From Bugula neritina (Eukaryota; Animalia; Bryozoa), in NCBI GenBank assembly GCA_964035545.1, contig OZ037772.1, forward strand, positions 4,840,233 through 4,904,232: a DNA stretch of 64,000 nucleotides, read 5' to 3'. The first letter of the stretch is position 1; the number at the start of each line of letters is the position of its first letter. The notes below the pieces were generated by a model. The model saw nothing but the letters and a program-made list of their open reading frames with translations. It was not told the DNA's origin and searched no databases. Made by a program: the position numbers and the translations under genes. This document shows positions 2,513-49,270 of this stretch, piece after piece.

Positions 2513-3122
2513 GTAAGCGTCATCCACTTTAAAAGATAATTTAGTCACAGAAGTCAAAGGTACAATTTATTTTTGTTGGATTTGTTGTTTTTAATTTACA
2601 CACGTTATAATTATTATATGGCATTGTTATATATATAGTCATGCTAGTATATCATGTAAGTGTATTTAAAGTTAGAGTTTGAACTGTACTCAGCTATAAT
2701 AAACCACCTGTTATCAGCTAATGCATGTAAACATTATTTAGAATATACTTTGATAAGATGACCTTTACTATAATCTGTTACTGTGTAGTTACAGTATACA
2801 CAGTGACACACACAGGCACACTGCAGTAGCAGGTAGGTGAGGCTACTGTTGAATTCTTAAACATTATAATATATAATAGTATATAATTATTATATCATGT
2901 TATATGTTATATATAGCATTTAGGATTGTTGTATTTCTGAGTTGAACAAGACTGATTAAAATATGTACAAAAAAGTTTTGTAAACATTGAATGGTAGTAT
3001 TAAGAAAACAACTATATATACATGTATATGTTTTGTGAATTCACCAGAATATTTGAAATAATGACATGAATGGGCTTACATATCACCACTAACTCTTATA
3101 TACCAGCTTATAACCAATTCTA

Positions 3123-3227
3123 TAGACACACAGACAGACTATTTACTGTAGACACACAGACAGACTAGTTATCGTAGACACACAGACAGACAGCTTACTG
3201 TAGACACGCAGACAGACTACTCACTGT
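3123..3227. repeat. 26-bp minisatellite, about 4 copies (tagacacacagacagactatttactg)
   Basis: Directly visible. Confidence 0.85.
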
Positions 3228-3358
3228 ATCATTGATACCTGAAATATTTCATTACCTTTTCTAATTGTAGATCATCTAATAATGGAAACACAAAACTAGA
3301 ACATCTTCAACTGCTACAGATAAAAGTCAACATTAAAAAAAGTGTGGAGAAACTAGAA

Positions 3359-3380
3359 ATGAGTCGAGACTCATCTACAG
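3359..3380 (+). CDS. Probable first coding exon (MSRDSST, phase 1)
   Basis: ATG at 3359; donor CAG|GTATTC after 3380; phase 1 matches the acceptor at 3529/3530; upstream acceptor ttgtag at 3270. Confidence 0.55.
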
Positions 3381-6300: not shown

Positions 6301-9300
6301 GCTTTTCATCAGACGCAGAGGTTACCCATATGCATGAGAAGATGGGGAAGCCAGTGGCAGCCCTAGCTCAATCCAAGGCGTCAACTTCTGCCACGTGCTG
6401 GGATTGTGGCGGTCACGGACATCTCCACGAGGAGTGCCCAAGGATGAGAAGGGAGGTAAACTCTCGCGGCCCCCAAATGTTTCCCTTCACCAGGAGCCAC
6501 GAGTGAGGGACTTCTTATGGGGAAACTGTCAGCCGTCCAAACGGATGCAACAGACCACCCCGCAAAGATGGCAAGTGCCACGCAGGACAGATCGACCGTA
6601 TGATAGATCCGATACCTTTACCTTGCCACTCTACAATACCTTCGACGGGTTGTCTAAACCAGAATCTGAGGGAAGACAAGACTTAGCATCTGAGGGAATG
6701 TTTTCCCCCCTCAAACACCCACTTGTGGCCGCCAGAGGTCACATCAGTCGCAGCTCAAAGCGAGAGAGTTATCTCCTGCAGAGAAAAAGCACGCTAGGGG
6801 GAGTAGAGGTACAACCCTACAAAGGCAGCTACTTCTTACCAGGCAAAGTAGCCAACAACGTTGTCATCTTCTTGTTGGATTCAAAATGGACCACAAACCT
6901 CCTAAGTCGCTAACTCTTTGACACCCTCAGCGCTAGAGATAAGGCTGGGTTGCAACCGTACGACGGGGAACATGGCACGTTGGCAGACGGCTCATGTATG
7001 CCTTTTCATAGTATAGTCAAGTTGACAGAACATGTGCGGGATCAAGCTATCTAGGAAACTTTCATTGTCGGTCAACTCAGTGAGGATGCTAACTTCGGGA
7101 TGGCGTTCTTGAAGAGAAACGATTGTTATATTGACCTTAGCAAAATTGCGGTGGTTATGACTGGGCGTGAGCTCATCTGTGTCCACAAGTTTGGCAATGC
7201 TCTCAAAGGAGGCGTGCTGAGGCATTTTCAATAGATTGTAACATAGTGAGAAAATGCAGCTAACTGCTAATGTAAAATAGAGAACATTATATTGGCAGAA
7301 TTCCAATAGATTGCAAAGTTGTGCGAGAGGGTAATATGTTATTGTGATAGCGTCCAGAGCGGCAAATGTACTAGGAACGTTATAATTAGTGACAGGAGCG
7401 TAGCTAGAACCACCATATGCATAATCTAGATAATTGCAATAAAACTTTCATAATGGTATATGTTTTGACCAAATTGCAAAAAGCATAAACATAATTTTGA
7501 AGAACAAAGAAAGTATATTAGAGAAAACATAACAATGAATGTCAAGTTTAAAATTTAGACTTGCTAAAATGAATTCCCTGTGCTACAGCAGTGGAACATG
7601 GAGGGTGTTAAATTTTACTTATTGTGCAACAAATTTTTCAGAATTTCTTTTTTGAAAAATCAAAAAATATATGAAAGGGGAATGCAGGAGCTATCTTTTC
7701 ATGTTTAATTTGTTAATGTGAGACAAAAACTATTTGAGCTATCCCTCGAAAATAGAAGCTCTCTAGACCCTACTAAACATTAGCTTATGTATTATATTAT
7801 AATTTGTTAGTCAAAACGTTTTCTCTTAGTCTACCCGTTTGGCATAGGAGAAGAAAGCGTGACTGGTATATACTGTGGAGCTACTCTCTAATCAGCTTAA
7901 ATATGGACTTGATCCCATTCTCTCACATTTCTGACTACCCATTTGGTTGATTACATGATACACGTTTTTACTTGGGGAAATAAACAGTTCAAGCTTCATT
8001 GTGTAATATCCTGCAGACTAAAATCAATTGCGTTGAGTTAGCAATATATAATAGTAAATAAGTTTTTGGTTATATATATTTTGTATTATTTAATTTGTAT
8101 TATATAATTTACTGTCTGCTATAGCATGCCTAATCTGAAGAATCTGGAGACTCTTGATATGTCAAGTAATAAGTTCAGTGATGGATTACCGGATGTAGTC
8201 ACATCAATGACATCTCTTAAGGAGTTGATTATCAGTTTCTGTGAGCTACCAAATCTACCTGAAAGGTTAGTAAAACCAACTGAATATGAAATACAAATAA
8301 ACTGTTTTTATCTAGGGTTTTGCATAAATGTATTTTTCTAGACTCATATTTTTTGGTTGCTAAATATCTTGTGAAAATCTCTCAAGTTTCTTGCAATTTT
8401 TTGCAATATTATAACATAAATATGCAGATAAATATATGCTAATAAAGCAATGGTATGTATAAAATTATAACATGTGGCTAAATAGAATATATTATATGTG
8501 GGAAACGTTACAACATTTTAATTTTATATGCTTGAAATGAGTAAATTAGGTAAATTATAAGTTGACCTTATTAGCCTTTTCTTGAAAAATAAAAAGCATA
8601 AGTTTCAATATGTAATATCCTGTAGACTAAAATCATACTTTGATCTGCCAATATAATGTATATAACTGATATTTAAATAAGTCATACTGTCTTTTGCTAT
8701 ACTATAAGCAGTAATAAACTTTAATGAACGTGTTATAAACAATTAATCTGTATTTTGAAGCATAAAACAAAAGTGAATTATTTTAGCAAATTACCTGTAG
8801 CTATATATGTTAGATGTTAGATGGTTGTACTATACTATTTCATGTCTCAACTAGTATATGTTTACTATAGCATGTCTAATCTGAAGAATCTGGAGACTCT
8901 CGATACGTCAGGGAATAGGTTCAGGGAAGGGTTTCCTGAGGTATTAGCATCAATTACATCTTTAAGAAAGTTGGATATGCTTTACTGTGCGCTACCAACT
9001 CTACCTGAAAGGTTAGTAACAGCAACAAATATATATATAAAAGAAAAACAAACCAACTGAATATGAAATACAAATAAACTGTTTATCTAAGATTTTGAAT
9101 GCCTGCATTTTTCTAGACTCATATTTTTTGTTGCTAAATATTTTGTGACAATTTCTCAAAACTGTTAAAAATCTTGCTATAGTTACTATTACATAAAATG
9201 CACAACTAAGTGTACAATAATAAAGATATGCTATCTATAATATTATAAAATGTGGTTAACTGAATTTATATAATATATTGGAAACTTTACAATATTTTAA

Positions 9301-12300
9301 TTTCGTATCCTTGAAACGGGTAAAAGCTAGCAAGTTGAGTTGATTGGTTTTCCTTCATAGATAATAAAAAGCTCACGCTTCAATATGTAATATCATGCAG
9401 ACTAAAATCAGACTTTGATCTGGCAATATAATGTATAATTCATATTTAATTGAGTCATACAGTCATACAGTTATAAATTTTTTTGTTATGCTCTAAGCTT
9501 TAATATACTTTAAAGATTTAGAAACAATTATTTTGTATTTTGAAGTATGAAACAAAAATGGATTGTTTTCAAAAACTGCCAGTGATGATAGAAAACATTA
9601 TTATATATACTAATAAAATGTAAATTGTATAATTTGTATTCAGCTTAAGGTGTTGAAAAGAAGAACTCATGCAGTATATTTCACACACATATGTGAGAGT
9701 TATATCTAATAATGTTTTTTATTCCAACTTCATTCTCTATTGGATAAGATTTACCTATCAATAAAAAGATTTATGCTGAAATTACATTTATTTTACTTTA
9801 GATGGTTGTATTACTGTATGATGTCTCAACTGGTATATTTTTACTATAGCATGTCTAATCTAAAGAATTTGGAGACTCTTAATATGTCGGAGAATAACTT
9901 CAGTGAAGGATTACCTGATGTATTCACATCAATGACATCTCTAAGAGAGTTGCATATGAAGAACTGTAAACTAGAAACTCTACCTGAGAGGTTAGTGAAA
10001 GCAACTCAATATGAAATACAAATAAAATGTTTTTATCTGTAGTACACGACATCCAGGATTTGCCCCCAGTTCTTTAAACTTGAATTTTTTGCTGCCAAAC
10101 AATGTCTGAAAATTTTTCCAACCTGTTAAATTAGTCTTCCTATTTTGTATATAATGTGCAAACAAATATAGGCCAATAAAAAGAGTCTATGTAATATTAT
10201 GACATGTGGTTATAGATTATATAAGATATGTTACATTATTTTAGTTTCCTATAATGCTTGAATCAGGTAAAAGTTAAGGAGTGAGGTTCAGTATATAGTT
10301 TTTGTCTTGAAAAGATATACAGCTTAAGCTCTATTATATAATTTACTTGCAGACTAAAGTTGCGTTTATACCTTCACGATCTCGGTCAAAATTTCAATTT
10401 GGCCGGGTTGAAATTTTTCCGAGTTGCATTGCATTGTAAAAGCCACTTGTTGAAAATTTTGCACTGTGATAACGTAATCGGCCAATTTTAGAATAGGAGT
10501 AATAACTCCTTGTAAACATCGTTATTTAGTTATTACTTTGGCGATTAGACAACATACTTATACGGTTATGATTATATAGCCTACGCCTTCTCAATTATCG
10601 CTTTTAAGCTTTCCGCTTCACTAATTCACGACATTTACAAAGGGCATCAAATAGCTATTATGCGAGTCAAATTTCAATTTCAGAAAGTGAGCAACCGCAT
10701 CAATATAATTTCAACGAGTTTAAGTTTGACTATAAAGGGGTACCCGGAAAAGCGTTATTAACTTAAACTCGTTACTTTTTTCAGCAGAGGTATAAATGCA
10801 ACTTAAAACTAGCCATTGATCTGACAACATAACGTATAGCCTAATTGATATCTAAATTATACAGTTTTTTTATATACAATAAAAATATTCAATTTGACAA
10901 TCTTCAAATTTTATAGTAAAACAAAAACAAATTGTTTTAGCAAGTCACCTGTAATTATCAAAAAAAAATTTTAATTGGTGAGTAAAATTTAAATTGCACA
11001 TTTTATGTTTTACTCAGTTTTGTACAATAAACTCATGCTGCATGCAGTACATATTTCACATTCATATGTAATATCTACTGTTTATCTACTAATGTATTTT
11101 AATCCAACTTAATTTTCCATTCGATAAAATTTAAATACCAATCGACAATTTTGTGCTAGAATTACATTGCTTTAGCTTAAGATAGTTGTATTATTAAATG
11201 ATGCCTCAAATTTAGTAAGGAATTATACCTGATGTAGTCGAGGGGTATTGGGTATTGGATATCAATTACTGTGAACTACCAATTCTACCTGAGAGGTTTG
11301 TAAAAGCAACAATTTTATTTAATACAAATAAACTGTTTCTATCTGGGATTTTGCATAGCTGTATTTTTCTAGATTTAAATTTTTTGCTGCTTGATTTCTT
11401 GAAAAGAAGAACTCATGCACTATATTTCACACACATTTGGGAGATTTATATCTCATAATGTCTTTTATTCCAACTTCATTTTCCATTGAATGAAATTTAT
11501 ATATCAATAAAAAACTTACAGCTGGAATTAGATTTCCTTTGCTTTAAATGGTTTTATTACTATATGATGTCTCAACTGGTTTATGTTTACTATAGCATGT
11601 CTAATCTGAAGAATCTGGAGTTTCTTGATATGTCACAGAATAAGTTCAGTGATGGAGTACCTGATGTATTCACATCAATGACATCTCTAAGAGAGCTAGA
11701 TATGAGAAGCTGTGCACTGCCAACTCTACCTGAGAGGTTTGTAAAAGCAACAATCATAGGGAATACAAATTAACTGTTTCTATCTGGGATTTTGCAGGCT
11801 TGCCTTTGTTTAGACTTGCCAAATACTTTGTGAAAATTTCTCAAATCTATTAGGTACAAAAGCAACAATTATATGAAATACAAACAAACTGTTTCTATCT
11901 AGGGTTTTTAATGCCTGCCTTTATCTAGACTTGTCAAATACTTTGTGAGAATTTCTCAAGTGTATTAGGTACAAAATCTTGCCATAATTATTACATAAAA
12001 TAGGCATATAAATATACGCTAATAAAGACATGTTATGTATAATAATTATTATAACACATGTGGTTAAATAGAATATATTATTAATAGGAAACTTTACAAT
12101 GTTCTAATTTCCCATGCTTGAAACCAGTAAAAGTTAGTAAGTTGAGTAGTTATTAGCTTTTTCTTGAAAAAATATACTGTCTCTGCTTTATTATGTAATA
12201 TTCTGCAAACTACAGTGTGGCTTTGATCTTCCAATATAATATATAATTCATATTTAAATAAGGCATACAGTCTTTTTTTATACCTCAAGCAGTAATAAAC

Positions 12301-15300
12301 TTTCAAGTTTTAGAAACAAATAATCTGTATTTTGAAATATCAAACAAAAATGTATTATTTTCAAAAACTACCAATAACGATAGAAGATATAATTATATAT
12401 ACAAATATAATGTGAATTTCATAACTTGTATTCTGCTTAAAGTGTTAAAAGAAGAACTCATACATGCAGTATATTTCACACACATATGTGAAATTCATAT
12501 CTAACAATGTTTTTTATTCCAACTTTATTTTCCATTAGATGAAATTTATATATCAATAAGAAACTTTCCTTTGCTTCAGATGGTTTCATTACCATATGAT
12601 GTCTCAACTGGTATGTGTTTACAATAGCATGTCTAATCTGAAGAATCTGGAGACTCTTGATATGTCATGGAATAAATTCAGTGATGAATTACCTGATGTA
12701 TTCACATCAATGACATCTCTAAGGACGTTGTATATGCAGAACTGTGAACTACCAACTCTACATGAGAGGTTAGTGAAAGCAACTAAATATGAAACACACA
12801 TAAAATGTTTTTATCTGTAGTACACGACATCCAGGATTTGTCCGCATTTCTTTATACTTAAATTCTTTGCTGGCAAATAATTTCTGAAAATTTTTTTCAA
12901 ACCTGTGAAATTATTCTTGCTATATTGTATACAATATGCAAATAAATACAAGCCAATAATAAGATTCAATGTAGTATTATGACATATGGTTCTAGAATAT
13001 ATAAAAATGTTACAAATTTCAGTTTCCTATATTCCTTAACCCTTGAATTAAGTAAAAGTTAATGAGTTGTGTTCAGTATATAGTTTTTTTAAAAGATATA
13101 CAGCTTAAGCTCTATTATATAATATACTTGCAGACTAAAACTAGCCATTGATCTGACAACATATTGTATAATTGATATCAAAATTACACAGTTTTTTATT
13201 GAATGCAATAAAAATTGTTAATTTGATAATCTTTAAATTTTAAAGTATAACAAAAACAAATTATTTTAGCAAATCACTTGTAATTATCGAAAAGAAATTA
13301 TTTTATATGTGAATAAAACTTTAGTTGTACATCTGATGCTTTACTCAGTTTTGAAAATTAAGAGCTCATGCTGCAGTACATGTTTCACATGCATATGTAA
13401 TATCTACTGTTTATCTACTAATGTATTTTATTCTAACTTCATTTTCAATCGAATGAAATCTGTATGTCAATCGGCAATTTTATGCTAGAATTAAATTGCT
13501 TTAGCTTAAGATGGTTGTGTTACTATATGATGTCTCAACTGGTATATGTTTACTATAGCATGTCTAATATGGAGAATCTGGAGACTCTTGATATGTCAGT
13601 GAATAACTTCAGGGAAGGATTACCTGATGTATTCACATCAATGAAATCTCTAAGGACGTTGAATATGCAGAACTGTAAACTAACAACTCTACCTGAGAGG
13701 TTAGTGAGAATGCATTAAATAAAATGTTCATTAGTGTGAAGGATACAGTTATGCGAATAAAATTACTCATTTTTTATTAAAAGTATCTACAGGTTTTGAA
13801 GTTTTACCTTTTTACAAACTTGTTGCATTTCTCAAGTGCAATATATTAGGTTCACAGTAGAATCACAAATACCAGCTGTGTTACATACTTCCCATTGAAA
13901 GTCAACCACCGGCTTGCCAGCTGACGTTCTAGCCATTACACTCCAAGGGTAATCCTAACACTCCATGCAACCAGTTATTCTAAACTCTGTTGGTCCCCTT
14001 ACTACTCATTCAGTTTAGGCTTCCCGGCCTCTCAACTCTCTTGGCGTACTACCAAAATGCTATACTAAATGTGAAAGAGCTTGCTAACAATTACACACGG
14101 GTCACCAGGTGATCTCAACACCACACTAAGCTGTTCACGTGTGCATTCAGTTTCCTGCTACCACAAAGCTATTCACCTGCACTAACTGTCATGATGTAAG
14201 AACTTCAATTACAGGAGGTTGTAATTCTACATACCCCTCCTTTCAAATGGAAGGACATCACAATTACTAGACTTTAAATTATTATAAGCGCATTACAGAG
14301 ATTACTTGATTAGCATGTGAATAAAGTCTTATTTGTATCTTTTATGCTTCACTTGGTCTAATATATGAGCTGCACACTTGTATGACACAGTAGATGTGCA
14401 CAGCCATAATCTACTACCGTATTACTAAATGATGTTTCAATTACTATATTATGTTTACTATAGCATGTCTAATCTGGAGAATCTGGAGACCCTTGATATG
14501 TCAGGGAATAACTTCAGTAAAGGATTACCTGATGTATTCGCATCAATGACATCTCTAAGAGAGTTGCATATGAAGAGTTGTGAACTACCAACTCTACCTG
14601 AGAGGTTAGTGAAAACAACTCAATATGAAATGCAAATAAACTATTTTTCCTGTAATACACGACATCCAGGATTTGCCCGCATTTCTTTATACCTAAATTT
14701 TTTGCTGCCAAATAATTTCTGAAAATTCTTCAAACCTGTGAAATTATTCTTGCTATATTGTATATAATATGCAAATAAATACAAGCCAATAAAAAGAATA
14801 TATGTAGTATTATGGCATATGATTCTAGAAATATAAAAAATGTTACAATACTTTAATTTCCTATATTCCTTAACGCTCGAATTGAGTAAAAGTTAATGAA
14901 TTTAGTTCAGTATATAATTTTTTTTCAGAAGTTATACAGCTTAAGCTCTGTTATATAATATACCTGCAGGTTAAAACTAGCTATTGATCTGACAACATAA
15001 CGTATAATTGATATGTAAATTATACAGTCTTTTATTAAATGCAATAAAAATTGTTAATTTGACAATCTTTAAATTTCAAAGTATAACAAAAACAAACTAT
15101 TTAAGCAAATCACTTGTAATTATTGAAATGAATTGCTTTTATATGTGAATAAAACTTGAGTTGTACATCTGATGTTTCACTAAGTTTTAAAAAAAGCTCA
15201 TGCTGCAGTACATGTTTCACATGCATATGTAATATCTACTGTATATCTACTAATGTATTTTATTCTAACTTCATTTTCAATCGAATAAAGTCTGTATGTC

Positions 15301-18300
15301 AATAGGCAATTTCATGCTAGAATTACATTGCTTTAGCTTAAGATGGTTGTATTACTATATGATGTCTCAACTGGTATATGTTTACTATAGCATGTCTAAT
15401 CTGAAGAATTTGGAGACTCTTCGTATGTCAGGGAATAAGTTCAGTGAAGGATTACCTGATGTATTCACATCAATGACATCTCTAAGAGAGTTGAATATGC
15501 GGTACTGTGTGCTACCAACTCTACCTGAGAGGTTAGTGAAAGCAACCCAATATGAGATACAAACAAGAATTTTTTATCTGTAGTACACGACATCCAGGAT
15601 TTGTCCGCATTTCTTTATACTTAAATTTTTTGCTGCCAAATAATTTCTGAAAATTTTTCAAAACCTCTTAAATTATTCTTGCTATATTGTAAATAATATG
15701 CAAATAAGTAGAAGCCAATAAAAAGATTCTATGTAGTATTATGACATATGATTCTAGAATATATAAAACATGTTACAATACTTCAATTTCCTATATTCCT
15801 CAACGCTTGAATTGAGTAAAAGTTGATGAGTTAAGTTCAGTATATAGTTTTTTTCTTGAAAAGATATACAGCTTTAGCTCTATTATATAATATACCTGCA
15901 GACTAAAACTAGCCATTGATCTGACAACATAATGTATAATTGATATTTAAATTATACAGTCTTTTATTAAATACAATAAAATTGGTTACTTGACAATCTT
16001 CAAATTTTAAAGTATAACAAAAACAATTTATTTTGGCAAATCACCTGTAATTATCGAAAAAAAATGATTTTATATGTAAATAAAATTTTAGTTGTACATC
16101 TGATGCTTTACTCAGTTTTAAAAAAAAGCTCATGCTGCAGTACATGTTTCACATGCATATGTAATATCTACGGTTTATCTACTAGTAATGTATTTTATTC
16201 CAACTTCATTTTCAATCGAATGAAATCTGTATGTCAATCGGCAATTTTATGCTAGAATTAAATTGCTTTAGCTTAAGATGGTTGTGTTACTATATGATGC
16301 TTTAACTGGTATATGTTTACTATAGCATGTCTAATCTGAAGAATCTAGAGACTCTTTATATGTCACAGAATAAGTTCAGTGAAGGATTACCTGATGTATT
16401 CACATCAATGACATCTCTAACTACATTGTATATGCAGATCTGTGAACTACCAACTTTACCTGAGAGGTTAGTGAGAATGCATTAAATGAAATGTTCATAA
16501 GTGTGAAGGATATAGTTCTTTAATAGAAGTATTTTTTTTTAATAAAATAATCTACAGTTTTTAAAGTTCTACAGTTTTACAAACCTTTTGCATTTCTTAA
16601 GTGCAATATATTAGGTTCACAGTAGAATCACAAGTATCAACTGTGTTTCATACTTCCCATTGAAAGTCAACCATCAGCTTGCCAACTGACGCACTAACCA
16701 TTACACTACAAGGGTAATCCTAACACTCCATGCAACCAGTTATTCTAAACTCTATTGGTCCCCTTACTACTCATTCAGTTTAGGCTTCCCGGGCCTCTCA
16801 ACTCTCTTGGCGTACTACCAAAATGCTATACTAAATGTGAAAGAGCTTGCTAACAATTACACACGGGTCACCAGGTGATCTCAACACCCCACTAAGCTGT
16901 CCACATGTGCATTCAGCTCCCTGCTACCATAAAGCTATTCACCTGCACTAACCGTCATGATGTATAAACTTCAATTACAGGCGGTTGTAATTTTACATGC
17001 CCCTCCTTTCAAATGGAAGGACATCACAATTACTAGACATCAAATTATTATAAGCGCATTACAGAGATTACTTGATTAGCATGTGAATAAAATCTTAGTT
17101 GTATATTTTATGCTTCACTTGGTCTAATATATGAGCTACACACTTGTATGACACAGTAGATGTGCACAGCCATATTCTACTACCATATTACTAAATGATG
17201 TTTCAATTACTATATTATGTTTACTATAGCATGTCTAATCTGGAGAATCTGGAGACTCTTGATATGTCATGGAATAACTTCAGTGAAGGATTACCGAATG
17301 TATTCACATCAATGACATCTCTAAGAGAGTTGCATATGAAGAGTTGTGAACTATCAACTCTACCTGAGAGGTGAGTGAGAATGCATTAAATAAAAAGTTC
17401 ATTAGTGTGGAGGATATAGTTCTGCAGTAGAAGTACCTATTTTTCATTCAAATTATCTACAGGTTTTAAAGTTCTACAGTTTTACAAATTTTCTCCATTT
17501 CTTAAGTGCAATATATCAGATTCACAGTAGAATCACAAGTCCCAACTGTGTTACAAACTTCCAATTGAGTCAATAAGTCAACCACCGGCTTGCCAGCTGA
17601 CGTTCTAGCCATTACACTACAAGTGTAATCCTAACACTCCATGCAACCAGTTCTTCTAAACTCCGCTGGTCCCCTTACTACTCATTCAGTTTAGACTTCC
17701 CGGGCCTCTCAACTCTCTTGGCGTACTACCAAAATGCTATACAAAATGTGAAAGAGCTTGCTAACAATTACACATGAGTCACTTGGTAATCTCAACACCA
17801 CACTAAGGGATTCACATGTGCATTCAGCTCCCTGCTACCATAAAGCTATTCACCTGCACTAACCGTCATGATGTAAGAACTGCATTTACAGGAGGTTGTA
17901 ATTCTACATGCACCTACTTTCAAATGGAAAGACGTCACAATTACTAGACATCAAATTATTATAAGCGCATGACAGATATTACTTGATTAACATGTGAATA
18001 AAATCTTATTTGTATATTTTATGTTTCACTTGGTCTAATACATGAGCTGCACACTTGTATGACACAGCAGAGGTGCACAGCCAACATCTACTACAATATT
18101 ACCTAATGATGTTTCAGTTAGTATATTATGTTTACTATAGCATGTCTAGTTTAAAGAATCTGGAGACTCTTATTATGTCAGGGAATAACCTCCGAGAAGG
18201 ATTATCTGAGGTATTCACATCCATGACATCTCTAAGAGAGTTGCATATAGAGAACTGTAAACTACCAACTCTACCTGAGAGGTTAGTGAAAGCAACTCAA

Positions 18301-21300
18301 TATGAAATACAAATAAATTATTTTATCTGTAGTACATGATATCCAGGATTTGCCTGCATTTCTTTATACTTAAATTTTTTGCTGCCAAATAATTTCTGAA
18401 AATTCTTTAAACCTGTGAAACTATTCTTGCTATATTGTGTATAATATGCAAATAAATGCACGCCAATAAAAAGAATATATGTAGTATTATGACATATGAT
18501 TCTAGAAATATAAAAAATGTTACAATACTTTAATTTCCTATATTCCTTAAAGCTTGAATTGAGTAAAAGTTGATGAGTTAAGTTCAGTATAAAGTTTTTT
18601 TTAGAATATATACAGCTTAAGCTCTATTAAATAATATACCTGCAGGCTAAAACTAGCCATTGATCTGACAACATAACGTATAATTGATATGTAAATTATA
18701 CAGCCTTTTAATAAATACAATAAAAATTGTTAATTTGACAATCTTTAAATTTTTAAGTATAACAAAAACAAATTATTTTAGCAACTCACCTGTAGTTATC
18801 AAAAAGAAACTATTTCATATGTGAATAATATTTTAGTTGTACATCTGATGCTTTACTCAGTTTTGAAAAAAAGCTCATGCTGCATACAGTACATGTTTCA
18901 CATGCATATGTAACATCTACTGTTTTTTTTTTAATAATGTATTTTATTTCGACTTCATTCTCCATCGAATAAAATCTGTATGTCAATCGGCATTTTTATG
19001 CTAGAATTACATTGCTTTAGCTTAAGATGGCTGTATTACTTACTATACAATGTTTCAACTGGTATATGTTTACTATAGCACGTCTAATCTGAAGAAACTG
19101 GAGACTCTTAATATGACAGGGAATAAATTCAGTAAAGGATTACCTGAGGTATTCACATTATTGACATCTCTAAGGACGTTGTATATGCAGAGCTGTGAAC
19201 TATCAACGTTACCTGAGAGGTGAGTGAGAATGCATTGAATAAAAAGTTCATTAGTGTGGAGGATATAGTTCTGCAGTAGAAGTACCTATTTTTTATTCAA
19301 ATTATCTACAGGTTTTAAAGTTCTACAGTTTTACAAATTTTCTGCATTTCTTAAGTGCAATATATCAGGTTCACAGTAGAATCACAAGTCCCAACTGTGT
19401 TACAAACTTCCAATTGAGTCAATAAGTCAACCACCGGCTTGCCAGCTGACGTTCTAGCCATTACACTACAAGTGTAATCCTACACAGAGAGAAATATTAG
19501 TGTTAGAGTGAACATTAGCTGACAACTAAAACAGCTCGTTTTTTGGCTCCTAAATTGACCAGCAGTGAATAGAAATTAGTGTCAGGTACTGTTAACAGTG
19601 AATAGTATGTTAGATCAATGTTGATATAAAGAGTTGTGAAGTTGATTCTCTGTATTTATCACAATGAGCCAAGTTACGTTCAATGGTGATCTTATATAAT
19701 ATGTTCAATGGTGAGCTTATTTATGCTCAATAGTGATATTATATATGTTTAATAGTGATCTTATTTATGTTCAATAGTGATATTATATATTTTCAATGGT
19801 GATCTTATTTATGCTCAATAGTGATATTATATATGTTTAATGATGATCTTATTTCTGTTCAATGATGATCTTAGATATGCTCAATGCTGAACTAAGTTAT
19901 ATTCAAAGCTGAACTTATAAATGTTCCATGCTGCTCTAATTTTTGTTGGAAATAAGCTTCTGCAAAAATTATTACTGATCACTCTGAACTAACTTGTCAT
20001 AACTTCTAACCAGTATGAGAGTATAGTAATGTGGATTTTATTGTATATGATAGTTGAATATAAGAAATGCAACAAAAAATAACTTTTAAAGATTAAAATA
20101 AGAAAAAAAACATGAAAATAAGCATTTGCAGAACTTTTCTACGACTGTAAATTCAGTTAACTTTTCTCAATATTAGCAGAACCTGCTAAGACCATAGTGT
20201 GTGTCATTACATTCTTGCTCTGTAGTGTAGCGATAACCAAGCAGTTGTGGTGTGTAATGGTTAGCACACCTGTGATCAAGTCCGAGGTCTGTGATAGTAA
20301 CCCAAGTATGGGAGGGGGGAGGGGGAAGTTTTATAACTAATTCTAGCGGTTAGTAAAGTGTGGTAGAACTCCGAGAGGATTTGAGTGGTCAGGGAAGCTT
20401 GAAGGAGTAGTATAAAAAGGCAGCTGAGTTCTTGAAAAGTGGGTAAGGTGTAGTGTCGAGAGCACCCAGTGACGCTTGTAATGTAGTGGTGAGTGCGCCT
20501 GCTTGCAGGCTGAAGGTCTCAGCATGATTCAAAGTTTTGTAGCGGTCAAATTCTTTTTTGTGCTCCTATTCAGAATCCTTGAGTGCATGTTCTTAAAAAA
20601 TGTTATGGGATCTACAACAAAAGATAAAAGTTGGGTAATATTTAAACTGTATTAGTATGAACAGTAAACATTTGGTTAAGATATACAATCACAAGCAGCT
20701 TATAAATTAAGTTCAACTTTGAAGAAGCTGAAGTCTAAGGCCAAAACTAATAGTACCAATAATGTTAGCTATGAATCTTTCAGCATATTTTCAGCACCGT
20801 CGCACCAATCGTTTGATTCTGAATAACCATACAGGCTTTGACAAACTTATGATCATTATGTTGCGTAGTGTTTGGGTTAGTTTGAGCTTATCAAAATTTA
20901 GTTACAATTTTGGCCATTGTTTTATTTTACTTCTTTCCTAATTACAAATGCAAGAGCTAATGGGCATAATTAGTTTAGTTAATAGAAGCTTCTCTGCATT
21001 AAAAGTATCTCAAAATGTCAGTGAACCACAATTTAGGCTGGAGTCAGCATTTTATATAGACCCCTCATATCGAGATAACAGATATTGAGAAGTTTCAGCA
21101 TGTCTATAAATTGAAAAACAAATAAAGTACTACCAAGAAAAATATTGCTACTTATACATGTTTTTATATTTAATTGTGCTGTGCAAAGATAAATAAAAGA
21201 ATAAACTGGTGGCACGGAAGTTAATAAAAATTTTTGCCAACTCACCACTAATATTGGCATTTTGGTACTTAGCTATAAAACAAGAAGCTAGCTTGGCAGC

Positions 21301-24300: not shown

Positions 24301-27300
24301 AAGCACTATAGTCCAATAACAACCTGTTAAAGCATGAAATCCAGTAAGTGCTGCACACAACTGCAGTCCAGATTTATTTGCTGCAATGTTTACTTCCAAA
24401 TACCTTATATGATTATGGTTTTCTCCCAGATAGACCCTGTTTTTATTTTGTTACCATATATATATATATATAATAATATTACCTATATAACTGTTGTATT
24501 GATTGCTAAATAGCTAATATGCTAATAGCTATAGCAGCTAACATGAATTATCTAGAATAATATTCTATTATTTTTACGAATTTGTGTGAGGCAAAAAGTA
24601 GTAATACATTAATAATAGACACTATCTTTAATGGATACTTATTAACTAAATATTTTTTCAAACAACAGGCAAGATGTATAAAATATACAAAATTACTAGG
24701 TTAATGCAAATTAAAGGAATTTATTTATGTGCTAAATAACAAGCAATTGATCCAAGTTTATTTAGATATACATATATTTCAATAATATTAAAGGAAGTTG
24801 CACATGAAAATACATTTTACCAAAATAAATAACTAGGGTCTATGTAGGAAATTTAGCCTAGCCTGATCTATCTATAATATAATATACTATAATATATTAA
24901 TATAATATAATTGGTAAGAAGGTAATGTTTTGCAAACAGCGAGACTTGAGATGAAAACATCAGTGTCTTAAGATTTGATTATTACACGTAGGATTATGAT
25001 GTTCATAAAATACTTTGCATGTAACAAAGTTTGTGTACCTGCCTTCTCATGATCTAATTGTAAGCATTTGAGTTCTGCTTTCTTAGGAATTCCACCATGT
25101 TTGAAAAATTGTAGCTGAACGCAATTTTTTTGGGTATGCAACAACTATAATAACAATATTTTTACTTCATATTTCACACAAAAATGCACCAGTCTCAAAT
25201 TCAGCTTGTTTTATTTGCTGATAAGAAATTATTATTTTTGTGACAAATGGCACACATAAAAAAAGTACATGCCTATGATCTTTGAATAAGGCAGCCCAAG
25301 ATCATTTTGCTAATGGGTGGCCTAAATGTAACCATATATATTTTAAATTATAGGGAAGCTTTAGGGTATTCCTTCTGTAACTATAACTGAGCTAAATTGA
25401 CTCTAGAGTCATTCTATCAAGATAGTATAAAAATATCCATTTAATTTAACCAATAGCATTGTTTTAAAAACCAAATTGCTTATTTATATATAGTTCAGCC
25501 TAAATTTATTGGCAAAGCTTGATTGCACACGTTTAAAATATTTTGTTCCGGAGTCCAGATCAACCTGCTCATGCTTTTCATTACTTTTTTTGTAAAAGTA
25601 ATTATCATAATAACAATCGTGAAAAAAATCATTACTAGACACAGATTTACTTATAATTCGGCTTTTTTATAGCCGATCAATAATAATGTTTGCCTTATAA
25701 CTGAAAAACCCATTCCTTTGCTTGTTTTCGTCCATATAGTCCACTTTTTTTCAGATTTTTAGACAAGAAAATCACTAGAATTAAACTCAGAGAAGTGAAA
25801 AGCACATCTATGAATATCTGCAAAAGTTTTTGCTTGTACATATAATAAACTAGCTTCAATAATTTCAAGATAATATTTAATAGATTTGGACAAAGTTGTG
25901 GGGAAACAACTCCTGTAAAATTTTAAAGAGTTTTTGTGACTAACTAGGTGGATAGAAAAATTTAGAGTTTTTATAACAGAATAGTGAAAAGAGCATCTAT
26001 AATTATCAGCAAAATTATTTTGCTTATATAAAATAAATTAGCTTGAATAATTCCAAGATATTTAGCTGATTCACAAAAACGTTAAGAGAAAACAACTCCT
26101 GATCAATTTTAAAAGTTTAAAGCACTTTTGTGGCTAGCTGGGTGCACAGAAGAGTCTAGAGTTTTCACAGATTAATTAGGACCCTACAAACTCTCCATTT
26201 CGAAAAAAATTGCGTGGCCACCTCTCGGAGTGTAATGAGTGAAAGATAATTGGAGGTTACTTCTAGACTACTAGGGATGATAATTATGTAATACTTGTGA
26301 AAAGTAGCGTTGACTTAACAACTAAGTGGTTTCAGAGCTACTACAAAATATTTTTCAGCTTACACTAATCGGATTAATTTTCAATTTCATCAAAATAAGT
26401 GCAGGTCTAACAACTATTAGAGGTGTGGTGCAGGCTATACCGACAATAAAAGGCTCTTTGAACAACTTTAGTGCAAGCACTGCACTAATATTTCTCTCTG
26501 TGTAACACTCCATGCAACCAGTTCTTCTAAACTCTGCTGGTCCCCTTACTACTCATTCAGTTTAGACTTCCCGGGCCTCTCAACTCTCTTGGCGTACTAC
26601 CAAAATGCTATATAAAATGTGAAAGAGCTTGCTAACAATTACACATGGGTCACTTGGTAATCTCAACACCACACTAAGGGATTCACATGTGCATTCAGCT
26701 CCCTGCTACTATAAAGCTATTCACCTGCACTAACCGTCATTATGTAAGAACTTCATTTACAGGAGGTTGTAATTCTACATGCACCTACTTTCAAATGGAA
26801 GGACATCACAATTACTAGACATCAAATTATTATAAGCGCATGACAGATATTATACTTGATTAACATGTGAATAAAATCTTATTTGTATATTTTATGTTTC
26901 ACTTGGTCTAATACATGAGCTGCACACTTGTATGACACAGCAGAGGTGCACAGCCAAAATCTACTAAAATATTACCTAATGATGTTTCAATTAGTATATT
27001 ATGTTTACTATAGCATGTCTAGTTTAAAGAATCTGGAGACTCTTATTATGTCAGGGAATAACCTCCGAGAAGGATTACCTGAGGTATTCACATCCATGAC
27101 ATCTCTAAAAGAGTTGCATATAGAGAACTGTAAACTACCAACTCTACCTGAGAGATTAGTGAAAGCAACTCAATATGAAATACAAATAAAATAATTTTAT
27201 CTGTAGTACCAACATCCTGGATTTGCCTGCATTTCTTTATACTTAAATTTTTTGCTGCCAAATAATTTCTGAAAATTTTTCGAACCTGTGAAATTATTGT

Positions 27301-39300: not shown

Positions 39301-42300
39301 TTTATCACATATTATCATTCATTATGGCATATTCACAATTTCATTAATTGTAGTTTTCACCGACAGTTTTACCAATAAAACATCAGTAGAGACTGAAGAC
39401 CACATTGTGCCTGTTTACAAACCAGGGATGATAGTTTACAGTTAATTTGACAATCTTTAAATTTTCAAGTATAACAAAAACAATTTATTTTAGCAAATCA
39501 CCTGTAATTATCGAAAAGAAATTATTTCATATGTGAATAAAATTTTAGTTGTACATCTGATGCTTTACTCAGTTTTGAAAAAAAGGCTAATGCTGCATGC
39601 AGTACATGTTTCACATGCATATGTAACATCTACTGTTTATCTACTAATGTATTTTATTCCGACTTCATTTTCCATCGAATAAAATCTGTATGTCAATCGG
39701 CAATTTTATGCTAGAATTAAATTGCTTTAACTTAAGATGGTTGTATTACTATGTGATGCTTCAACTGGTATATGTTTACTATAGCATGTCTAATCTGAAG
39801 AATCTAGAGGCTCTTCATACGCGAGAGAATAACTTCAGTGAAGGATTACCTGATGTAGTCACTTCAATGACATCTCTAAGGATGTTGGATATGCATATCT
39901 GTGAACTACCAACTCTACCTGAGAGGTTAGTGAGAATGCATTAAATAAAGTGTGCATTAGTGTGAAGGATATAGTTCTGCAATAGAAGTACTTATTTGTT
40001 TATTAAAATTATATACAGTTTTTAAAGTTCTACAGTTTTACATTTGTTCTGCATTTCTTAAGTGCAGTATATTAGGTTCACAGTAGAATCACAAGTACCA
40101 ACTTTGTTACATACTTCCCATTGAAAATCAACCAACAGCTTGCCAGCTGACGCACTAACTATTACACTACAAGGGTAATCCTAACACTCCATGCAACCAG
40201 TTATTCTAAACTCTGCTTGTCCCCTTACTACTCATTCAGTTTAGGCTTCCTGGGCCTCTCAACTCTCTTGGCGTACTACCAAAATGCTATACTAAATGTG
40301 AAAGAGCTTGCTAACAATTACACATGGGTCACTGGGTAATCTCAATACCCCACTAAGCTGTTCACATGTGCATTCAGCTCCCTGCTACCATAAAGCTATT
40401 CATGTGCACTAACCGTCATGATGTATAAGTTTCAATCACAGGTTGTAATTCTACACGCTCTTACTTTCAAATGGAAGGACATCACAATTACTAGACATCA
40501 AATTATTATAAGCACATTACAGGGAGCCTCAATGAAATAAAATATTAGAATATAATTATATCATCGTTATTTATGCAGTTATGTGTTGCAAGAAAACCTA
40601 ATCTTTATGATGGTTAGAGAGTAAACAGTTATACAGGATTTATCAAATTGCATTTCATTGGTTTGTAACACATGAACATTTATATAGTATAATGGCTGTA
40701 CACAGTTGTAACTTTTGACTGAGAAATTTAAAGAAAGTTGCTTTTTTGAGGCCGCAGATATTTCTGCAAATTAATAGACATCAAATAAATATGAACTAAG
40801 TATATGCAGCCTTTCGTGAAATAAATTACAAAAAAATATAATCATTTTTATTATTATCATTATTATCATAGTAGGTCAGGTCACATAGAATGCCTGCTAC
40901 CGGATAACCATGAAAACCGGTACAACCTGTTTCATGGGTCGAGTGGTCAGCGACTAAACTGACAAGTGGGTTAGACTGGACATCCTTAGGTCTGTAGTGT
41001 GGGGGGGGAGGGTGGCTACGCCTGTCATTGTGAGGTGACACATACTCCCAGAAGAGCAGGGGTTAACATACCTATCTCTTGGTCAGTCCCTGCCGATTGT
41101 GGGTTTTTGATCATGCAAAAGCCAGTAGTACCTTAATTCCTTTGCAAGCAGTTTTCATGAAGTGGTCTGTCAATAGCACATTCATGCCGGCTCGGACATC
41201 GCTTGGAAGAACAAGGTCGGCACCAATCTGTTCTCACTCCGGCAGTAAGCAAAAAGTGTGCTAGGAGTAGGAAGAAAAAAAGGAAGAGATGTTCCTTTAT
41301 ATGTAAAAGAATGGAATGTACAAGCACTAATAGATTGATCACAATCCCAGAGTTCAGAGAGACAGACTGCTTTTATAGCCATAGAGATAGAGAGTTATGG
41401 CATCGATGTGGCTACACTTAGTGAAATAATTTTGTCAGGCTATAATAGCTTAGTAGATGATGGGTATACTTTCTACTGGAGTGGATAGTCAGCTGATAAA
41501 AGAAGAGAAGCAGAGATAGAATTTGTCATCAAAAACGAGGTTGCTCTTCACCTTGGGTGAAGGACCAACTCCTATAAAATATCGAATCTTGACAATGAGG
41601 CTTCCTCTTCAAAGGAGATTTCACGCGACTTTTATTAGTGTATATACTTCTACTACGACAAATACTGAAGGACTAAATAAACAGTTTAACAATGATCTGA
41701 GAGACAAGATCAATTTTGTTCTAGTTAATAATGAATTGATACTGATTGATGATTTTATTGCAAAGATAGGCTCAGTTTCTGAGAAATGGAAAGGAGTACT
41801 TTGTAGTCATTTTGTAAGTAAGTGCAATGGAAATAGAGAATTTCTTCTAGCTTTCTGTTTAGAGTACAGTCTTGTGATAACTAATACCATCTTTAAACAC
41901 AAGGAATCACACAAGATTACATAAATAGAAGAGATGCAGATCTGTTTGATGTTACTCATTTTAAGTCTATAACTAAAACTACTACGGAGTTGGTGAAAAA
42001 CTTGCTAATTGCCGGTGATAGTGCTTTAATTGTTTATCATTCTGATGATATACAGACTCCAGTTAACAGTTTTTCTCATTCTGCAAAAGATTGTAGCTTT
42101 AAAATTTACATGAAAAAGAGAGAACGCCTTTATCAGCCTCCAAAATTTCAAAGTGCAACATGTCAGCCAAACCGTATAGCCATCAAATGAAAACCTTTGA
42201 AAAGGTGTCAGACATTTAAGTACCTTAGAAGAACAGAAGCTGTAGACGCTAAACTAAATAATGAAAGTTTCTTGAGAATAGGAAGTGCTAGTGCAGTGCA

Positions 42301-48808: not shown

Positions 48809-49270
48809 AGTCACATGAGACAACAAGTAGAGAGAGAAGCAGAATCAAGTAACATGAGACAACAAGTAGAGAGAGAAGCAGAGTCAAGTAACACCAGACA
48901 AGTAGAGAGAGAAGCAGAATCAAGTAACACGAGACAACAAGTGGAGAGAGAAGCAGAATCAAGTAACACGAGACAACAAGTAGAGAGAGAAGCAGAGTCA
49001 AGTAACATGGGACAACAAGTAGAGAGAGAAGTAGAGTCAAGTAACATGAGACAACAAGTAAAGAGAGAATCAGAGTCAAGTAACATGACACAACAAGTGG
49101 AGAGAGAAGCAAAGTCAATTAACACAAGACAACAAGTAGAGAGAAAAGCAGAGTCAAGTAACACGAGACAACAAGTAGAGAGAATAGCAGAGTCAAGTAA
49201 CCCGAGACAACAAGTAGGGAGAGAAGCAGAATCAAGTAACATGAGACAACAAGTAGAGAGAGAAGCAGAG
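48689..49270 (+). repeat. 39-bp minisatellite, 15 copies, encoding SSN(T/M)RQQVEREAE; it straddles the stop codon
   Basis: Unit TCAAGTAACAYGAGACAACAAGTAGAGAGAGAAGCAGAR; copy 4 begins TGA instead of TCA (48806-48808); one copy lacks a CAA codon. Confidence 0.95.

What the first reader, a model, noticed from the sequence alone, without database searches (positions are those of the whole stretch)
8125..39925. Hypervariability confined to solvent-exposed LRR positions
Seen: framework codons (TCT AAT CTG AAG AAT, ACA TCA ATG ACA TCT CTA, CTA CCT GAG) are almost invariant even at silent sites, while the x positions of LxxLxLxxN/C vary radically. LRR-A residue after LExL: D/N/R/Y/I/H; residue before N: S/G/E/Q/W/V. 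LRR-B strand: KELIISF, RKLDMLY, RELHMKN, RELDMRS, RTLYMQN, RTLNMQN, RELHMKS, RELNMRY, TTLYMQI, RELHIEN, RTLYMQS, RMLDMHI. Established: these positions form the concave ligand-binding face and diversify in plant NLRs and VLRs. Inference: diversifying selection for recognition of varied non-self ligands.
Basis: partly seen in the sequence, partly recalled or inferred. Interest (0 to 1): 0.85.

Follow-up and report, generated by a model that had tools for sequence, protein, structure and literature searches.

The report
Fast-evolving binding face of LRR receptor
A marine animal (probably a bryozoan) gene builds its leucine-rich-repeat sensor from 14 near-identical 141-base exons in which only the seven residues on the predicted binding face change, about 3-4 times faster than neutral DNA. 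This marks it as a likely fast-evolving recognition receptor, a pattern I found described only in brown algae.

Summary
The window holds 14 tandem 141-nt, phase-2 exons on the + strand, each encoding 47 aa (two LRRs). One of them (27014) has lost its GT donor. Variability above 2 bits is confined to codons 11 and 14 (LRR-A) and 33, 35, 37, 38 and 40 (LRR-B). These are motif positions 3, 5, 7, 8 and 10 of LxxLxLxxN/C.

The same holds in 68 cassettes from the six closest paralogues. Amino-acid identity is 23% at these sites and 82% elsewhere.

- Site models reject neutrality (M7/M8 2ΔlnL 137.6; window alone p=4.6e-4), with ω about 3.4 at exactly these sites.
- In 21 independent cassette pairs, replacement divergence there is 0.31, against 0.089 in flanking introns and 0.104 at silent sites.
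- In a fold model of a homologue these residues lie on or just after the β-strands.

One correction: silent-site conservation reflects recent spread of the exons (dS≈intron K≈0.11), not silent-site constraint.

The gene is LRR–Roc–COR with caspase exons just downstream. It belongs to a family of at least 68 genes (233 candidates). The closest known analogue is the exon-shuffled LRR-ROCO family of brown algae. Ligand and immune role are inferred. Other first-stage notes flag the same family elsewhere in this genome.

The parts
3577..3758 (+). Leader exon (open frame) immediately upstream of the cassette array. The donor is GA|GTAAGT after 3758, phase 2.
   Evidence: Sequence. A loose end of an RNA-like contig in front of a cassette start is identical to 3729-3758. 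One paralogue carries the same 30-mer.
8125..8265 (+). LRR cassette exon 1 (141 nt, 47 aa, two LRRs)
8871..9011 (+). LRR cassette exon 2
9850..9990 (+). LRR cassette exon 3
11225..11293 (+). Degenerate half cassette inside the long third intron; a remnant of a dead exon
   Evidence: Weak tblastn match to cassette residues 22-47
11596..11736 (+). LRR cassette exon 4
12628..12768 (+). LRR cassette exon 5
   Evidence: RNA-like contigs lie on it and not on the introns.
13559..13699 (+). LRR cassette exon 6
14464..14604 (+). LRR cassette exon 7
15391..15531 (+). LRR cassette exon 8 (alpha-type intron on both sides)
16326..16466 (+). LRR cassette exon 9
17230..17370 (+). LRR cassette exon 10 (beta-type intron on both sides)
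18141..18281 (+). LRR cassette exon 11
19079..19219 (+). LRR cassette exon 12
27014..27154 (+). Disabled cassette: a 99% copy of exon 11 with an AT donor instead of GT. It lies inside the 20.5-kb intron.
   Evidence: upstream flank 98% and downstream flank 91% identical to those of 18141
39785..39925 (+). LRR cassette exon 13 (last spliceable cassette)
43963..45884 (+). Large exon encoding terminal LRRs, the Roc GTPase and COR. The acceptor is AG|T (phase 2) and the donor is T|GTAAGT. The P-loop reads GHTMAKKTS.
47024..47239 (+). Caspase (Peptidase_C14) exon, N-terminal part of the large subunit (limits are those of the open frame)
   Evidence: Pfam 39.6 bits against a cut-off of 21.4
47455..47730 (+). 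Caspase exon carrying the SHG and QACSG motifs (limits are those of the open frame)
   Evidence: Pfam 46 bits; translation

Best explanation
The region is the sensor domain of an LRR-Roc-COR gene, with caspase exons directly downstream, in a marine animal that is probably a bryozoan.

The sensor is encoded by an array of 141-nt, phase-2 cassette exons, each carrying an N-type and a C-type LRR. The array grew recently by tandem duplication and by recombination anchored in the exons. That is why framework codons, silent sites and same-type introns are all only about 10% diverged.

After each duplication, positive (diversifying) selection replaced amino acids at seven positions per cassette. These are motif positions 5 and 8 of LRR-A and positions 3, 5, 7, 8 and 10 of LRR-B. 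Their side chains point out of the β-sheet on the concave face and its ascending edge. Nearly every cassette therefore presents a different binding patch on an unchanged scaffold.

Shown here: the exon anatomy, the site-specific excess of replacement over both neutral yardsticks, the β-strand register, transcription and splicing of the cassette type, and the Roc-COR and caspase neighbours.

Inferred: that the face binds varied (non-self or allogeneic) ligands, and that binding switches Roc-COR and activates the caspase.
For: - Anatomy.
- Variability profile in the window and in 68 cassettes.
- ω by class under Nei-Gojobori counting: concave x positions 1.23-1.44, framework 0.13-0.41.
- Global ω 1.28.
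- My likelihood code reproduces IQ-TREE's lnL of -2842.01.
- M1a/M2a 2ΔlnL 123 and M7/M8 137.6, with sites 11, 14, 33, 35, 37, 38, 40.
- Pooled β/α is 2.15 for the concave class fixed beforehand (p=3.5e-5) and 0.40 for the framework.
- Window alone: M7/M8 p=4.6e-4.
- Exon halves with their own trees give the same result.
- Intron yardstick: K_intron 0.112, dS 0.123, dN at the hypervariable sites 0.50, dN elsewhere 0.081.
- 21 disjoint pairs: 0.089 (intron), 0.104 (silent), 0.308 (HV replacement), 0.073 (other replacement).
- Codon 35 is NAT with all four first bases common and the third base invariant in all 68 cassettes.
- Strand register in the AF2 model of the homologue P0049, which has a SHOC2 / Roco-LRR type fold.
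- RNA-like contigs lie only on exons, with cassette-to-cassette and leader-to-cassette junctions at the predicted borders.
- Roc-COR and caspase context.
- Family size.
Against: - No codeml/HyPhy or GARD run was possible. The site models are my own implementation on a fixed, poorly resolved tree of 138-nt sequences. Recombination is evident and is known to inflate such tests.
- With site-specific synonymous rates, sites 11, 37 and 40 are not individually significant.
- The hypervariable set was chosen after seeing the data, although the class fixed beforehand gives the same answer.
- Comparisons are among paralogous repeats, not alleles or orthologues. They show rapid divergence after duplication, not an ongoing arms race.
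- No ligand, no expression change on challenge and no population data are available.
- This copy has a non-canonical P-loop (G to K) and a 20-kb intron filled with a retrotransposon, so it could be decaying.
- The caspase exons are not shown to be in the same transcript.
Confidence: 0.75

Rival explanations
1. Concerted evolution plus preserved old diversity. The hypervariable residues are old differences among ancient cassette lineages. Exon-anchored recombination or gene conversion keeps homogenising framework and silent sites, while selection only prevents homogenisation of the binding residues. The ω>1 signal would then reflect maintained diversity, not accelerated substitution.
For: Exon silent divergence is almost independent of intron homology: pS is 0.113, 0.116 and 0.132 for pairs with both, one or neither flank alignable. 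Intron types are reassorted around exons. Replacement divergence at concave sites is already near its plateau in the youngest pairs (0.296 against 0.331).
Against: Conversion tracts cannot skip single codons. In pairs with homologous introns, dS equals intron K, so the exons are not extra-homogenised there. There are 65 distinct 7-residue signatures among 68 cassettes. This rival still requires selection for diversity at the same sites.
Confidence: 0.15
2. Relaxed constraint only. Surface x positions are simply free to drift, and the pattern is the ordinary contrast between LRR scaffold and surface.
For: In every LRR protein the x positions are the least conserved. Sites outside the hypervariable set also have a high ω (about 0.7-0.9).
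Against: Replacement divergence at the hypervariable sites is 3.4 times intron divergence and 3 times silent divergence in independent pairs (p=1.6e-31 and 1.6e-15). ω is 3.4 in the site models. Neutral drift cannot exceed the neutral rate.
Confidence: 0.05
3. Local mutational hot spots or targeted hypermutation at these codons.
For: The pooled synonymous rate at hypervariable codons is about twice that of other codons (α 1.85 against 0.88). Third-position diversity is 0.27 against 0.11.
Against: Diversity is highest at first and second codon positions (0.62 and 0.37). At codon 35 the third base is invariant in 68 cassettes while all four first bases are common. β/α is still 2.4 with the local α. 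Many third-position changes in these codons are themselves replacements.
Confidence: 0.03
4. Not a recognition receptor. The LRR arc is a scaffold for endogenous partners (as in SHOC2 or MFHAS1), and the repeats differ because each contacts a different part of a fixed partner.
For: The best structural matches are SHOC2 and bacterial LRR scaffolds. The only named homologue is annotated as an MFHAS1 homologue.
Against: A fixed partner predicts purifying selection at contact residues between recent paralogues, not ω>1. The family has at least 68 members (233 candidates) with cassette birth and death. Caspase exons lie downstream.
Confidence: 0.1

Closest known systems
Exon-shuffled LRR-ROCO genes of brown algae (Ectocarpus, Saccharina; Zambounis et al. 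2012, PMC3341825; Teng et al. 2024, PMC11378527)
   Same: - LRR-Roc-COR architecture.
- The LRR domain is built from equal-sized, phase-2, frame-preserving exons.
- Disabled LRR exons sit inside introns.
- The arrays are rearranged between recent paralogues.
- PAML-type positive selection falls at the same motif positions (3, 5, 7, 8 of LxxLxLxxN) on the concave face.
(searches compared)
   Different: - The host here is an animal, so the origin is independent.
- The exon unit is 141 nt and holds two LRRs (N-type plus C-type), not 72 nt with one LRR.
- No cassettes were found on the non-coding strand in the window.
- Caspase exons follow COR.
- The family is larger than the 9-47 genes reported there (one search compared).
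- Alternative splicing could not be tested here.
Plant NLR and receptor-like-protein LRR domains
   Same: Hypervariable, positively selected x residues of the xxLxLxx strand on a conserved scaffold. Tandem clusters with birth and death and unequal crossing-over. This rests on established knowledge.
   Different: The switch domain here is a Roc-COR GTPase, not NB-ARC. The repeats are separate symmetric exons, not one large LRR exon.
Lamprey and hagfish variable lymphocyte receptors (VLR)
   Same: LRR cassettes whose concave-face residues carry the diversity.
   Different: VLR cassettes are non-spliceable donor segments copied somatically into an incomplete gene. Here every cassette is an ordinary exon with AG/GT in transcriptional order, and there is no evidence of somatic change.
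Fungal NLR-like (HET-E/NWD) WD40, ANK and TPR repeat arrays
   Same: Highly similar tandem repeats with a few hypervariable, positively selected positions on the binding surface, together with repeat reshuffling. Established knowledge; see also PMC13449251, listed.
   Different: A different repeat fold, repeats within one exon, and a STAND NTPase instead of Roc-COR.
MFHAS1/MASL1 (animal LRR-Roc-COR) and SHOC2-type LRR arcs
   Same: Domain order LRR-Roc-COR. The only named homologue is an 'MFHAS1 homolog' (31% identity, E=7.6e-92). The LRR fold is closest to SHOC2, Leptospira LRR proteins and the C. tepidum Roco LRR.
   Different: MFHAS1 is single-copy in vertebrates and was reported only from deuterostomes (PMC4104024). 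Here there is a family of at least 68 genes with cassette exons, ω>1 and an adjoining caspase.

Membership tests
Leucine-rich repeat (typical LxxLxLxxN/CxL) | Tandem 23-24-residue repeats with L at positions 1, 4, 6 and 11 and N or C at position 9, forming a β-strand/loop solenoid | tested here: met
   Each cassette has the consensus LETLxMSxNxF followed by LRxLxMxxCxL. Pfam LRR_8 and LRR_14 hit the homologue P0049. The AF2 model is a solenoid with pLDDT 82, and its best PDB matches are LRR proteins.
ROCO proteins | Roc (Ras of complex) GTPase domain | tested here: met
   Pfam Roc gives E=1.4e-4 at 22.5 bits, which is below the 27-bit cut-off. However, 44 full-length homologues with E from 0 to 1.8e-53 mostly carry PF08477.
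ROCO proteins | COR domain directly after Roc | tested here: inconclusive
   COR-A (17 bits) and COR-B (18.5 bits) match in the right order but below their cut-offs. Several homologues carry PF16095.
ROCO proteins | Canonical P-loop GxxxxGK[ST] | tested here: not met
   The window gene has GHTMAKKTS. 20 of 32 homologues with a recognisable P-loop have GNTMAGKTS, and all of them have the GK.
Exon-shuffled LRR-ROCO candidate immune receptors (brown-alga type) | Each repeat unit is one symmetric exon of constant length and phase | tested here: met
   141-nt exons, phase 2, in all 14 copies. The same holds in another species' homologue, L052. The unit is two LRRs rather than one.
Exon-shuffled LRR-ROCO candidate immune receptors (brown-alga type) | Inactivated or extra LRR exons in introns, including on the non-coding strand | tested here: inconclusive
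   A disabled copy at 27014 and a half copy at 11225 are present. Paralogues carry truncated or stop-containing copies. None lies on the minus strand in the window.
Exon-shuffled LRR-ROCO candidate immune receptors (brown-alga type) | Positive selection at concave-face x positions | tested here: met
Exon-shuffled LRR-ROCO candidate immune receptors (brown-alga type) | Alternative splicing of LRR exons | tested here: inconclusive
   The RNA-like data are short contigs (40-108 nt) that fit several cassettes. The junctions lie at the predicted borders, but the order of exons cannot be read.
NLR (NACHT or NB-ARC plus LRR) | STAND NTPase domain (NACHT / NB-ARC) | tested here: not met
   Pfam finds Roc and COR but no NACHT or NB-ARC in the large exon.
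VLR-type somatically assembled LRR receptor | Cassettes are non-spliced donor segments flanking an incomplete germline gene | tested here: not met
   The cassettes are exons with AG/GT, in order on the coding strand, and they are spliced in RNA-like contigs.
Caspase (Peptidase_C14) as C-terminal effector | C14 domain with the His/Cys dyad, in the same transcript as Roc-COR | tested here: inconclusive
   The domain and the SHG / QACSG motifs are present 1.1-1.8 kb downstream on the same strand. The same adjacency occurs in a paralogue contig and in another species. Joint transcription was not tested.

The most novel reading that the evidence does not exclude
Bryozoans carry a very large (about 70 to over 200 genes) germline repertoire of single-chain LRR-Roc-COR-caspase receptors. 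This would be a ROCO-based counterpart of NLR/inflammasome sensors. Binding faces would be diversified by shuffling of symmetric two-LRR exons plus positive selection, and possibly further multiplied by combinatorial exon inclusion. The receptors would serve pathogen, symbiont or colony allorecognition and trigger cell death directly.
Probability: 0.3. Interest if true: 0.85.

Novelty: new variant of a known kind. Interest (0 to 1): 0.62.

Why it matters
Hypervariable concave-face residues on a conserved LRR scaffold are the classic mark of recognition receptors. Finding that mark here, with formal support, in an animal ROCO family has three consequences.

1. It suggests a third NTPase-switch architecture (Roc-COR, beside NACHT and NB-ARC) recruited for large receptor repertoires in animals.
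2. It is a striking convergence with brown algae, down to phase-2 repeat exons and the same selected motif positions.
3. It gives a concrete candidate gene family for the unexplained immunity and allorecognition of colonial bryozoans.

The size of the family also bears on two statements in the papers read. One is that brown algae hold the largest ROCO repertoires (PMC11378527). The other is that MFHAS1-like genes are confined to deuterostomes (PMC4104024).

Tried and rejected
- codeml, HyPhy and GARD are not installed. I wrote MG94-type FEL, M1a/M2a and M7/M8 code with a fixed topology and proportional branch lengths. Its M0 lnL equals IQ-TREE's.
- The per-site test with site-specific synonymous rates left sites 11, 37 and 40 non-significant. 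I therefore relied on pooled classes and on the intron yardstick.
- The representative-library search with one cassette returned mostly generic LRR proteins at 30-48% identity. Only P0049, P0084 and P0118 looked related.
- Folding the window's own spliced LRR domain was left out. No coordinates were returned, so no solvent-accessibility calculation was done.
- The RNA evidence consists of short Logan contigs. Exon order, exon skipping and gene-specific expression could not be resolved. The leader-exon 30-mer is shared with one paralogue.
The family-wide claim therefore rests on six close paralogues plus one other species.
- Literature searches for bryozoan LRR or ROCO expansions and for ROCO-caspase fusions found nothing specific.

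Full report
**What is there**

The window is G000:C8:4840233-4904232 of a 216-Mb assembly. Between 8125 and 39925 the + strand carries 14 copies of a 141-nt unit. Each is bounded by an AG acceptor and, in 13 of the 14, a GT donor. Each unit reads as 47 codons, with the first codon split AG|C (Ser), so every intron is in phase 2 and any subset of exons keeps the frame.

Each unit encodes two LRRs:
- LRR-A: NLETLxMSxNxFSEGLPDVF, with Asn at motif position 9.
- LRR-B: TSMTSLRxLxMxxCxLPTLPE, with Cys at motif position 9.

The copy at 27014 is a 99% duplicate of exon 18141 with its flanks, but it has AT in place of the GT donor. A degenerate half unit lies at 11225-11293.

**The variability pattern**

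I number codons 1-46 from exon nt 2, so the residue number within the cassette is the codon number plus 1.

- Within the window, amino-acid entropy exceeds 2 bits only at codons 11, 14, 35, 37 and 38. It is 1.5-1.7 bits at codons 33 and 40. The L, N and C framework positions are invariant.
- I then took the arrays of the five closest paralogous genes (Roc-COR exons 81-84% identical). In 68 distinct intact cassettes the same seven codons, and only these, exceed 2 bits, with 7-14 residue types each.
- These sites are motif positions 5 and 8 of LRR-A and positions 3, 5, 7, 8 and 10 of LRR-B.
- Six of the seven fall in the ten 'x' positions (2, 3, 5, 7, 8 of each repeat) that I fixed before looking (p=1.4e-4). 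Pairwise identity is 23% at the seven sites and 82% at the other 39. The 68 cassettes carry 65 different seven-residue signatures.

**Is it selection?**

Nei-Gojobori counts by site class:

| Data set | Concave class ω | Framework ω |
|---|---|---|
| Window | 1.23 | 0.13 |
| 68 cassettes | 1.44 | 0.41 |

IQ-TREE's MGK+F3X4 model gives a global ω of 1.28. codeml and HyPhy were not available, so I implemented the codon likelihood myself. It reproduces IQ-TREE's lnL (-2842.01).

Site models with fixed topology and proportional branch lengths:

| Data set | M1a vs M2a | M7 vs M8 | ω of selected class | Empirical-Bayes sites |
|---|---|---|---|---|
| 68 cassettes | 2ΔlnL 123 | 2ΔlnL 137.6 | 3.45 (about 23% of sites) | 11, 14, 33, 35, 37, 38, 40 (42 marginal) |
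| Window's 13 spliceable exons | p=0.0026 | p=4.6e-4 | 2.8 | 11, 14, 35, 37, 38 |

Recombination is evident in this array, so I repeated the test on each half of the exon with its own tree. The same sites came out, plus codons 25 and 42.

A per-site test that also frees the synonymous rate gave these results:
- Significant for positive selection: 14, 16, 25, 33, 35, 38, 42.
- Not individually significant: 11, 37, 40.
- Significant for purifying selection: the framework codons 4, 7, 15, 31, 41, 44.

Pooled over classes, β/α is 2.15 for the concave class fixed beforehand (p=3.5e-5), 2.37 for the seven sites and 0.40 for the framework.

**A tree-free yardstick**

The introns fall into types. Alpha and beta introns alternate, with two exceptions. 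This agrees with another first-stage note on exon-anchored crossovers.

For 129 cassette pairs whose 300-nt flanks on both sides are at least 80% identical:

| Measure | Value |
|---|---|
| Intron K | 0.112 |
| Exon dS | 0.123 |
| dN at the seven sites | 0.50 |
| dN elsewhere | 0.081 |

In 21 disjoint, hence independent, pairs the proportions are:

| Class | Proportion different |
|---|---|
| Intron | 0.089 |
| Silent sites | 0.104 |
| Seven hypervariable sites, replacement | 0.308 |
| Other sites, replacement | 0.073 |
| Concave class fixed beforehand, replacement | 0.254 |

Fisher tests give p=1.6e-31 (seven sites against intron), p=1.6e-15 (seven sites against silent) and p=4e-26 (concave class fixed beforehand against intron). 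Replacement change at the binding positions thus runs 3-4 times faster than two independent neutral measures. That excludes mere relaxation of constraint.

A local mutational hot spot is also unlikely. Diversity in these codons is highest at first and second positions (0.62 and 0.37, against 0.27 at the third). Codon 35 is NAT, with all four first bases common and the third base invariant in all 68 cassettes.

**The silent sites**

It is not constraint, because silent divergence equals intron divergence wherever the introns are homologous.

What is notable is that exon silent divergence barely depends on intron homology. pS is 0.113, 0.116 and 0.132 for pairs with both, one or neither flank alignable. 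The exon, not the exon-plus-intron unit, is therefore what has spread or been homogenised recently.

This leaves room for a variant reading: conversion homogenises the scaffold while selection preserves diversity at the binding sites. I list it as the main rival. It still requires selection for diversity at the same positions.

**Structure**

The spliced protein of the window has no reference, so I folded a homologue, P0049:1-470. It comes from the NCBI assembly GCA_963576615.1 and has the same 47-residue cassettes. The model has pLDDT 82 and pTM 0.81.

- DSSP places the strands at cassette residues 10-14 and 34-38.
- Hypervariable residues 12, 34, 36 and 38 alternate with the core L/M residues inside the strands.
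- Residues 15, 39 and 41 lie directly after the strands, on the ascending edge.
- The best PDB matches are SHOC2, Leptospira LRR proteins and the LRR of the C. tepidum Roco protein.
- No coordinates were returned, so accessibility was not computed. The concave-face assignment rests on strand register and standard LRR geometry.
- Codon 25 (F/V) lies in the helix, so 'confined to the concave face' is slightly too strong.

**Gene context**

- A leader exon ends at 3758 (GA|GTAAGT, phase 2).
- The last cassette (39785-39925) is followed by an exon at 43963-45884, with a phase-2 acceptor. It encodes terminal LRRs, Roc and COR.
- Two exons at 47024-47239 and 47455-47730 encode a caspase domain with SHG and QACSG motifs.
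- The same Roc-COR-then-caspase adjacency is seen on a metagenome contig of a paralogue and in the other species.
- In that species the cassettes are also 141-nt phase-2 exons, with introns of only about 85 nt. The cassette architecture is therefore older than this genome's expansion.
- The 20.5-kb intron between 19219 and 39785 holds the disabled cassette and a BEL/Pao retrotransposon.
- This copy's P-loop reads GHTMAKKTS, where the family has GNTMAGKTS. Its GTPase may be impaired.
- All 13 spliceable cassettes and the 640-codon exon are nonetheless intact.

**Expression**

Contigs from four RNA-type runs of four studies lie on the cassette exons and nowhere in the introns of 12550-18350. Their loose ends join cassette ends to cassette starts, and the leader exon to a cassette, exactly at the predicted borders.

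The contigs are 40-108 nt long and often fit several cassettes. The leader 30-mer also occurs in one paralogue. This shows that the cassette type is transcribed and spliced. It does not show which exons of this gene are used.

**Family and organism**

- The genome holds at least 858 candidate cassette matches, of which 150 were scored, all with E≤4.1e-10.
- It holds 233 candidate Roc-COR exons. The 68 that were scored have E<1e-188, and nearly all have open frames.
- The only named homologue is an 'MFHAS1 homolog' of the bryozoan Watersipora subatra. The host is therefore probably a bryozoan.

**Comparison with what is known**

The closest described system is the LRR-ROCO family of brown algae. 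It has 72-nt phase-2 exons with one LRR each, intronic dead exons, shuffled arrays and PAML-positive sites at the same motif positions on the concave face (PMC3341825, PMC11378527).

The present case differs in several ways:
- It is in an animal.
- Its exon unit holds two LRRs.
- A caspase adjoins COR.
- The family is larger than the 9-47 ROCO genes called the largest reported.
- MFHAS1-type genes were thought to be confined to deuterostomes.

I found no paper on bryozoan ROCO or LRR expansions. Other first-stage notes of this scan flag the same family elsewhere in this genome. None had been followed up.

**Verdict**

The immune or allorecognition role, and the sensor-switch-caspase mechanism, are plausible inferences that remain untested. 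I rate it a new variant of a known kind.

Noticed in passing
window 27014-27154: A cassette that is 99% identical to exon 18141, with flanks 98% and 91% identical, has an AT donor instead of GT. It is a recently duplicated and disabled exon inside the 20.5-kb intron.
   Followed up: partly
window 8266-19078 (introns): The introns come in mutually unalignable types that alternate: alpha after exons 12628, 14464, 15391 and 18141; beta after 13559, 16326 and 17230. Exon 15391 is flanked alpha/alpha and exon 17230 beta/beta. This implies a two-exon duplication unit plus crossovers in or near exons.
   Followed up: partly
window 44201-44227: The Roc P-loop reads GHTMAKKTS. 20 of 32 homologues have GNTMAGKTS, and all of them keep the Gly-Lys. 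This copy may not bind GTP normally.
   Followed up: partly
window 31589-38421: A BEL/Pao-type LTR retrotransposon (DUF1759 gag, RT, Peptidase_A17, integrase) with long open frames, inserted in the large intron in the same orientation as the gene.
   Followed up: partly
window 61973-62380: A second caspase (Peptidase_C14, QACNTG) open frame 14 kb downstream of the first caspase exons. Whether it is an alternative 3' end or a separate gene is unknown.
   Followed up: no
window 5712-6250 and 53136-53573: Two related gag-like open frames (MPQGEQAYRCCLKA... and MLQGEEAYRYRLKA...) with no Pfam match. They are probably fragments of one retroelement family flanking the gene.
   Followed up: no
window 48689-49274: A 39-nt tandem repeat of 15 copies (88% matches), open in several frames, just downstream of the caspase exons.
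   Followed up: no
window 11743-11976: A 115-nt tandem duplication inside the intron after exon 11596.
   Followed up: no
L052 (NCBI GCA_963576615.1, OY755161.1) 3001-20096: A homologous gene in another species has the same 141-nt phase-2 cassette exons, but with introns of about 85 nt. A separately annotated Peptidase_C14 gene starts only 38 nt after its end, so the two models may be one gene.
   Followed up: partly
C8a (G000:C8:4800001-4840000), cassettes at local 7216 and 11875: The upstream paralogue's array contains one truncated cassette and one with an in-frame TGA among otherwise intact cassettes.
   Followed up: no
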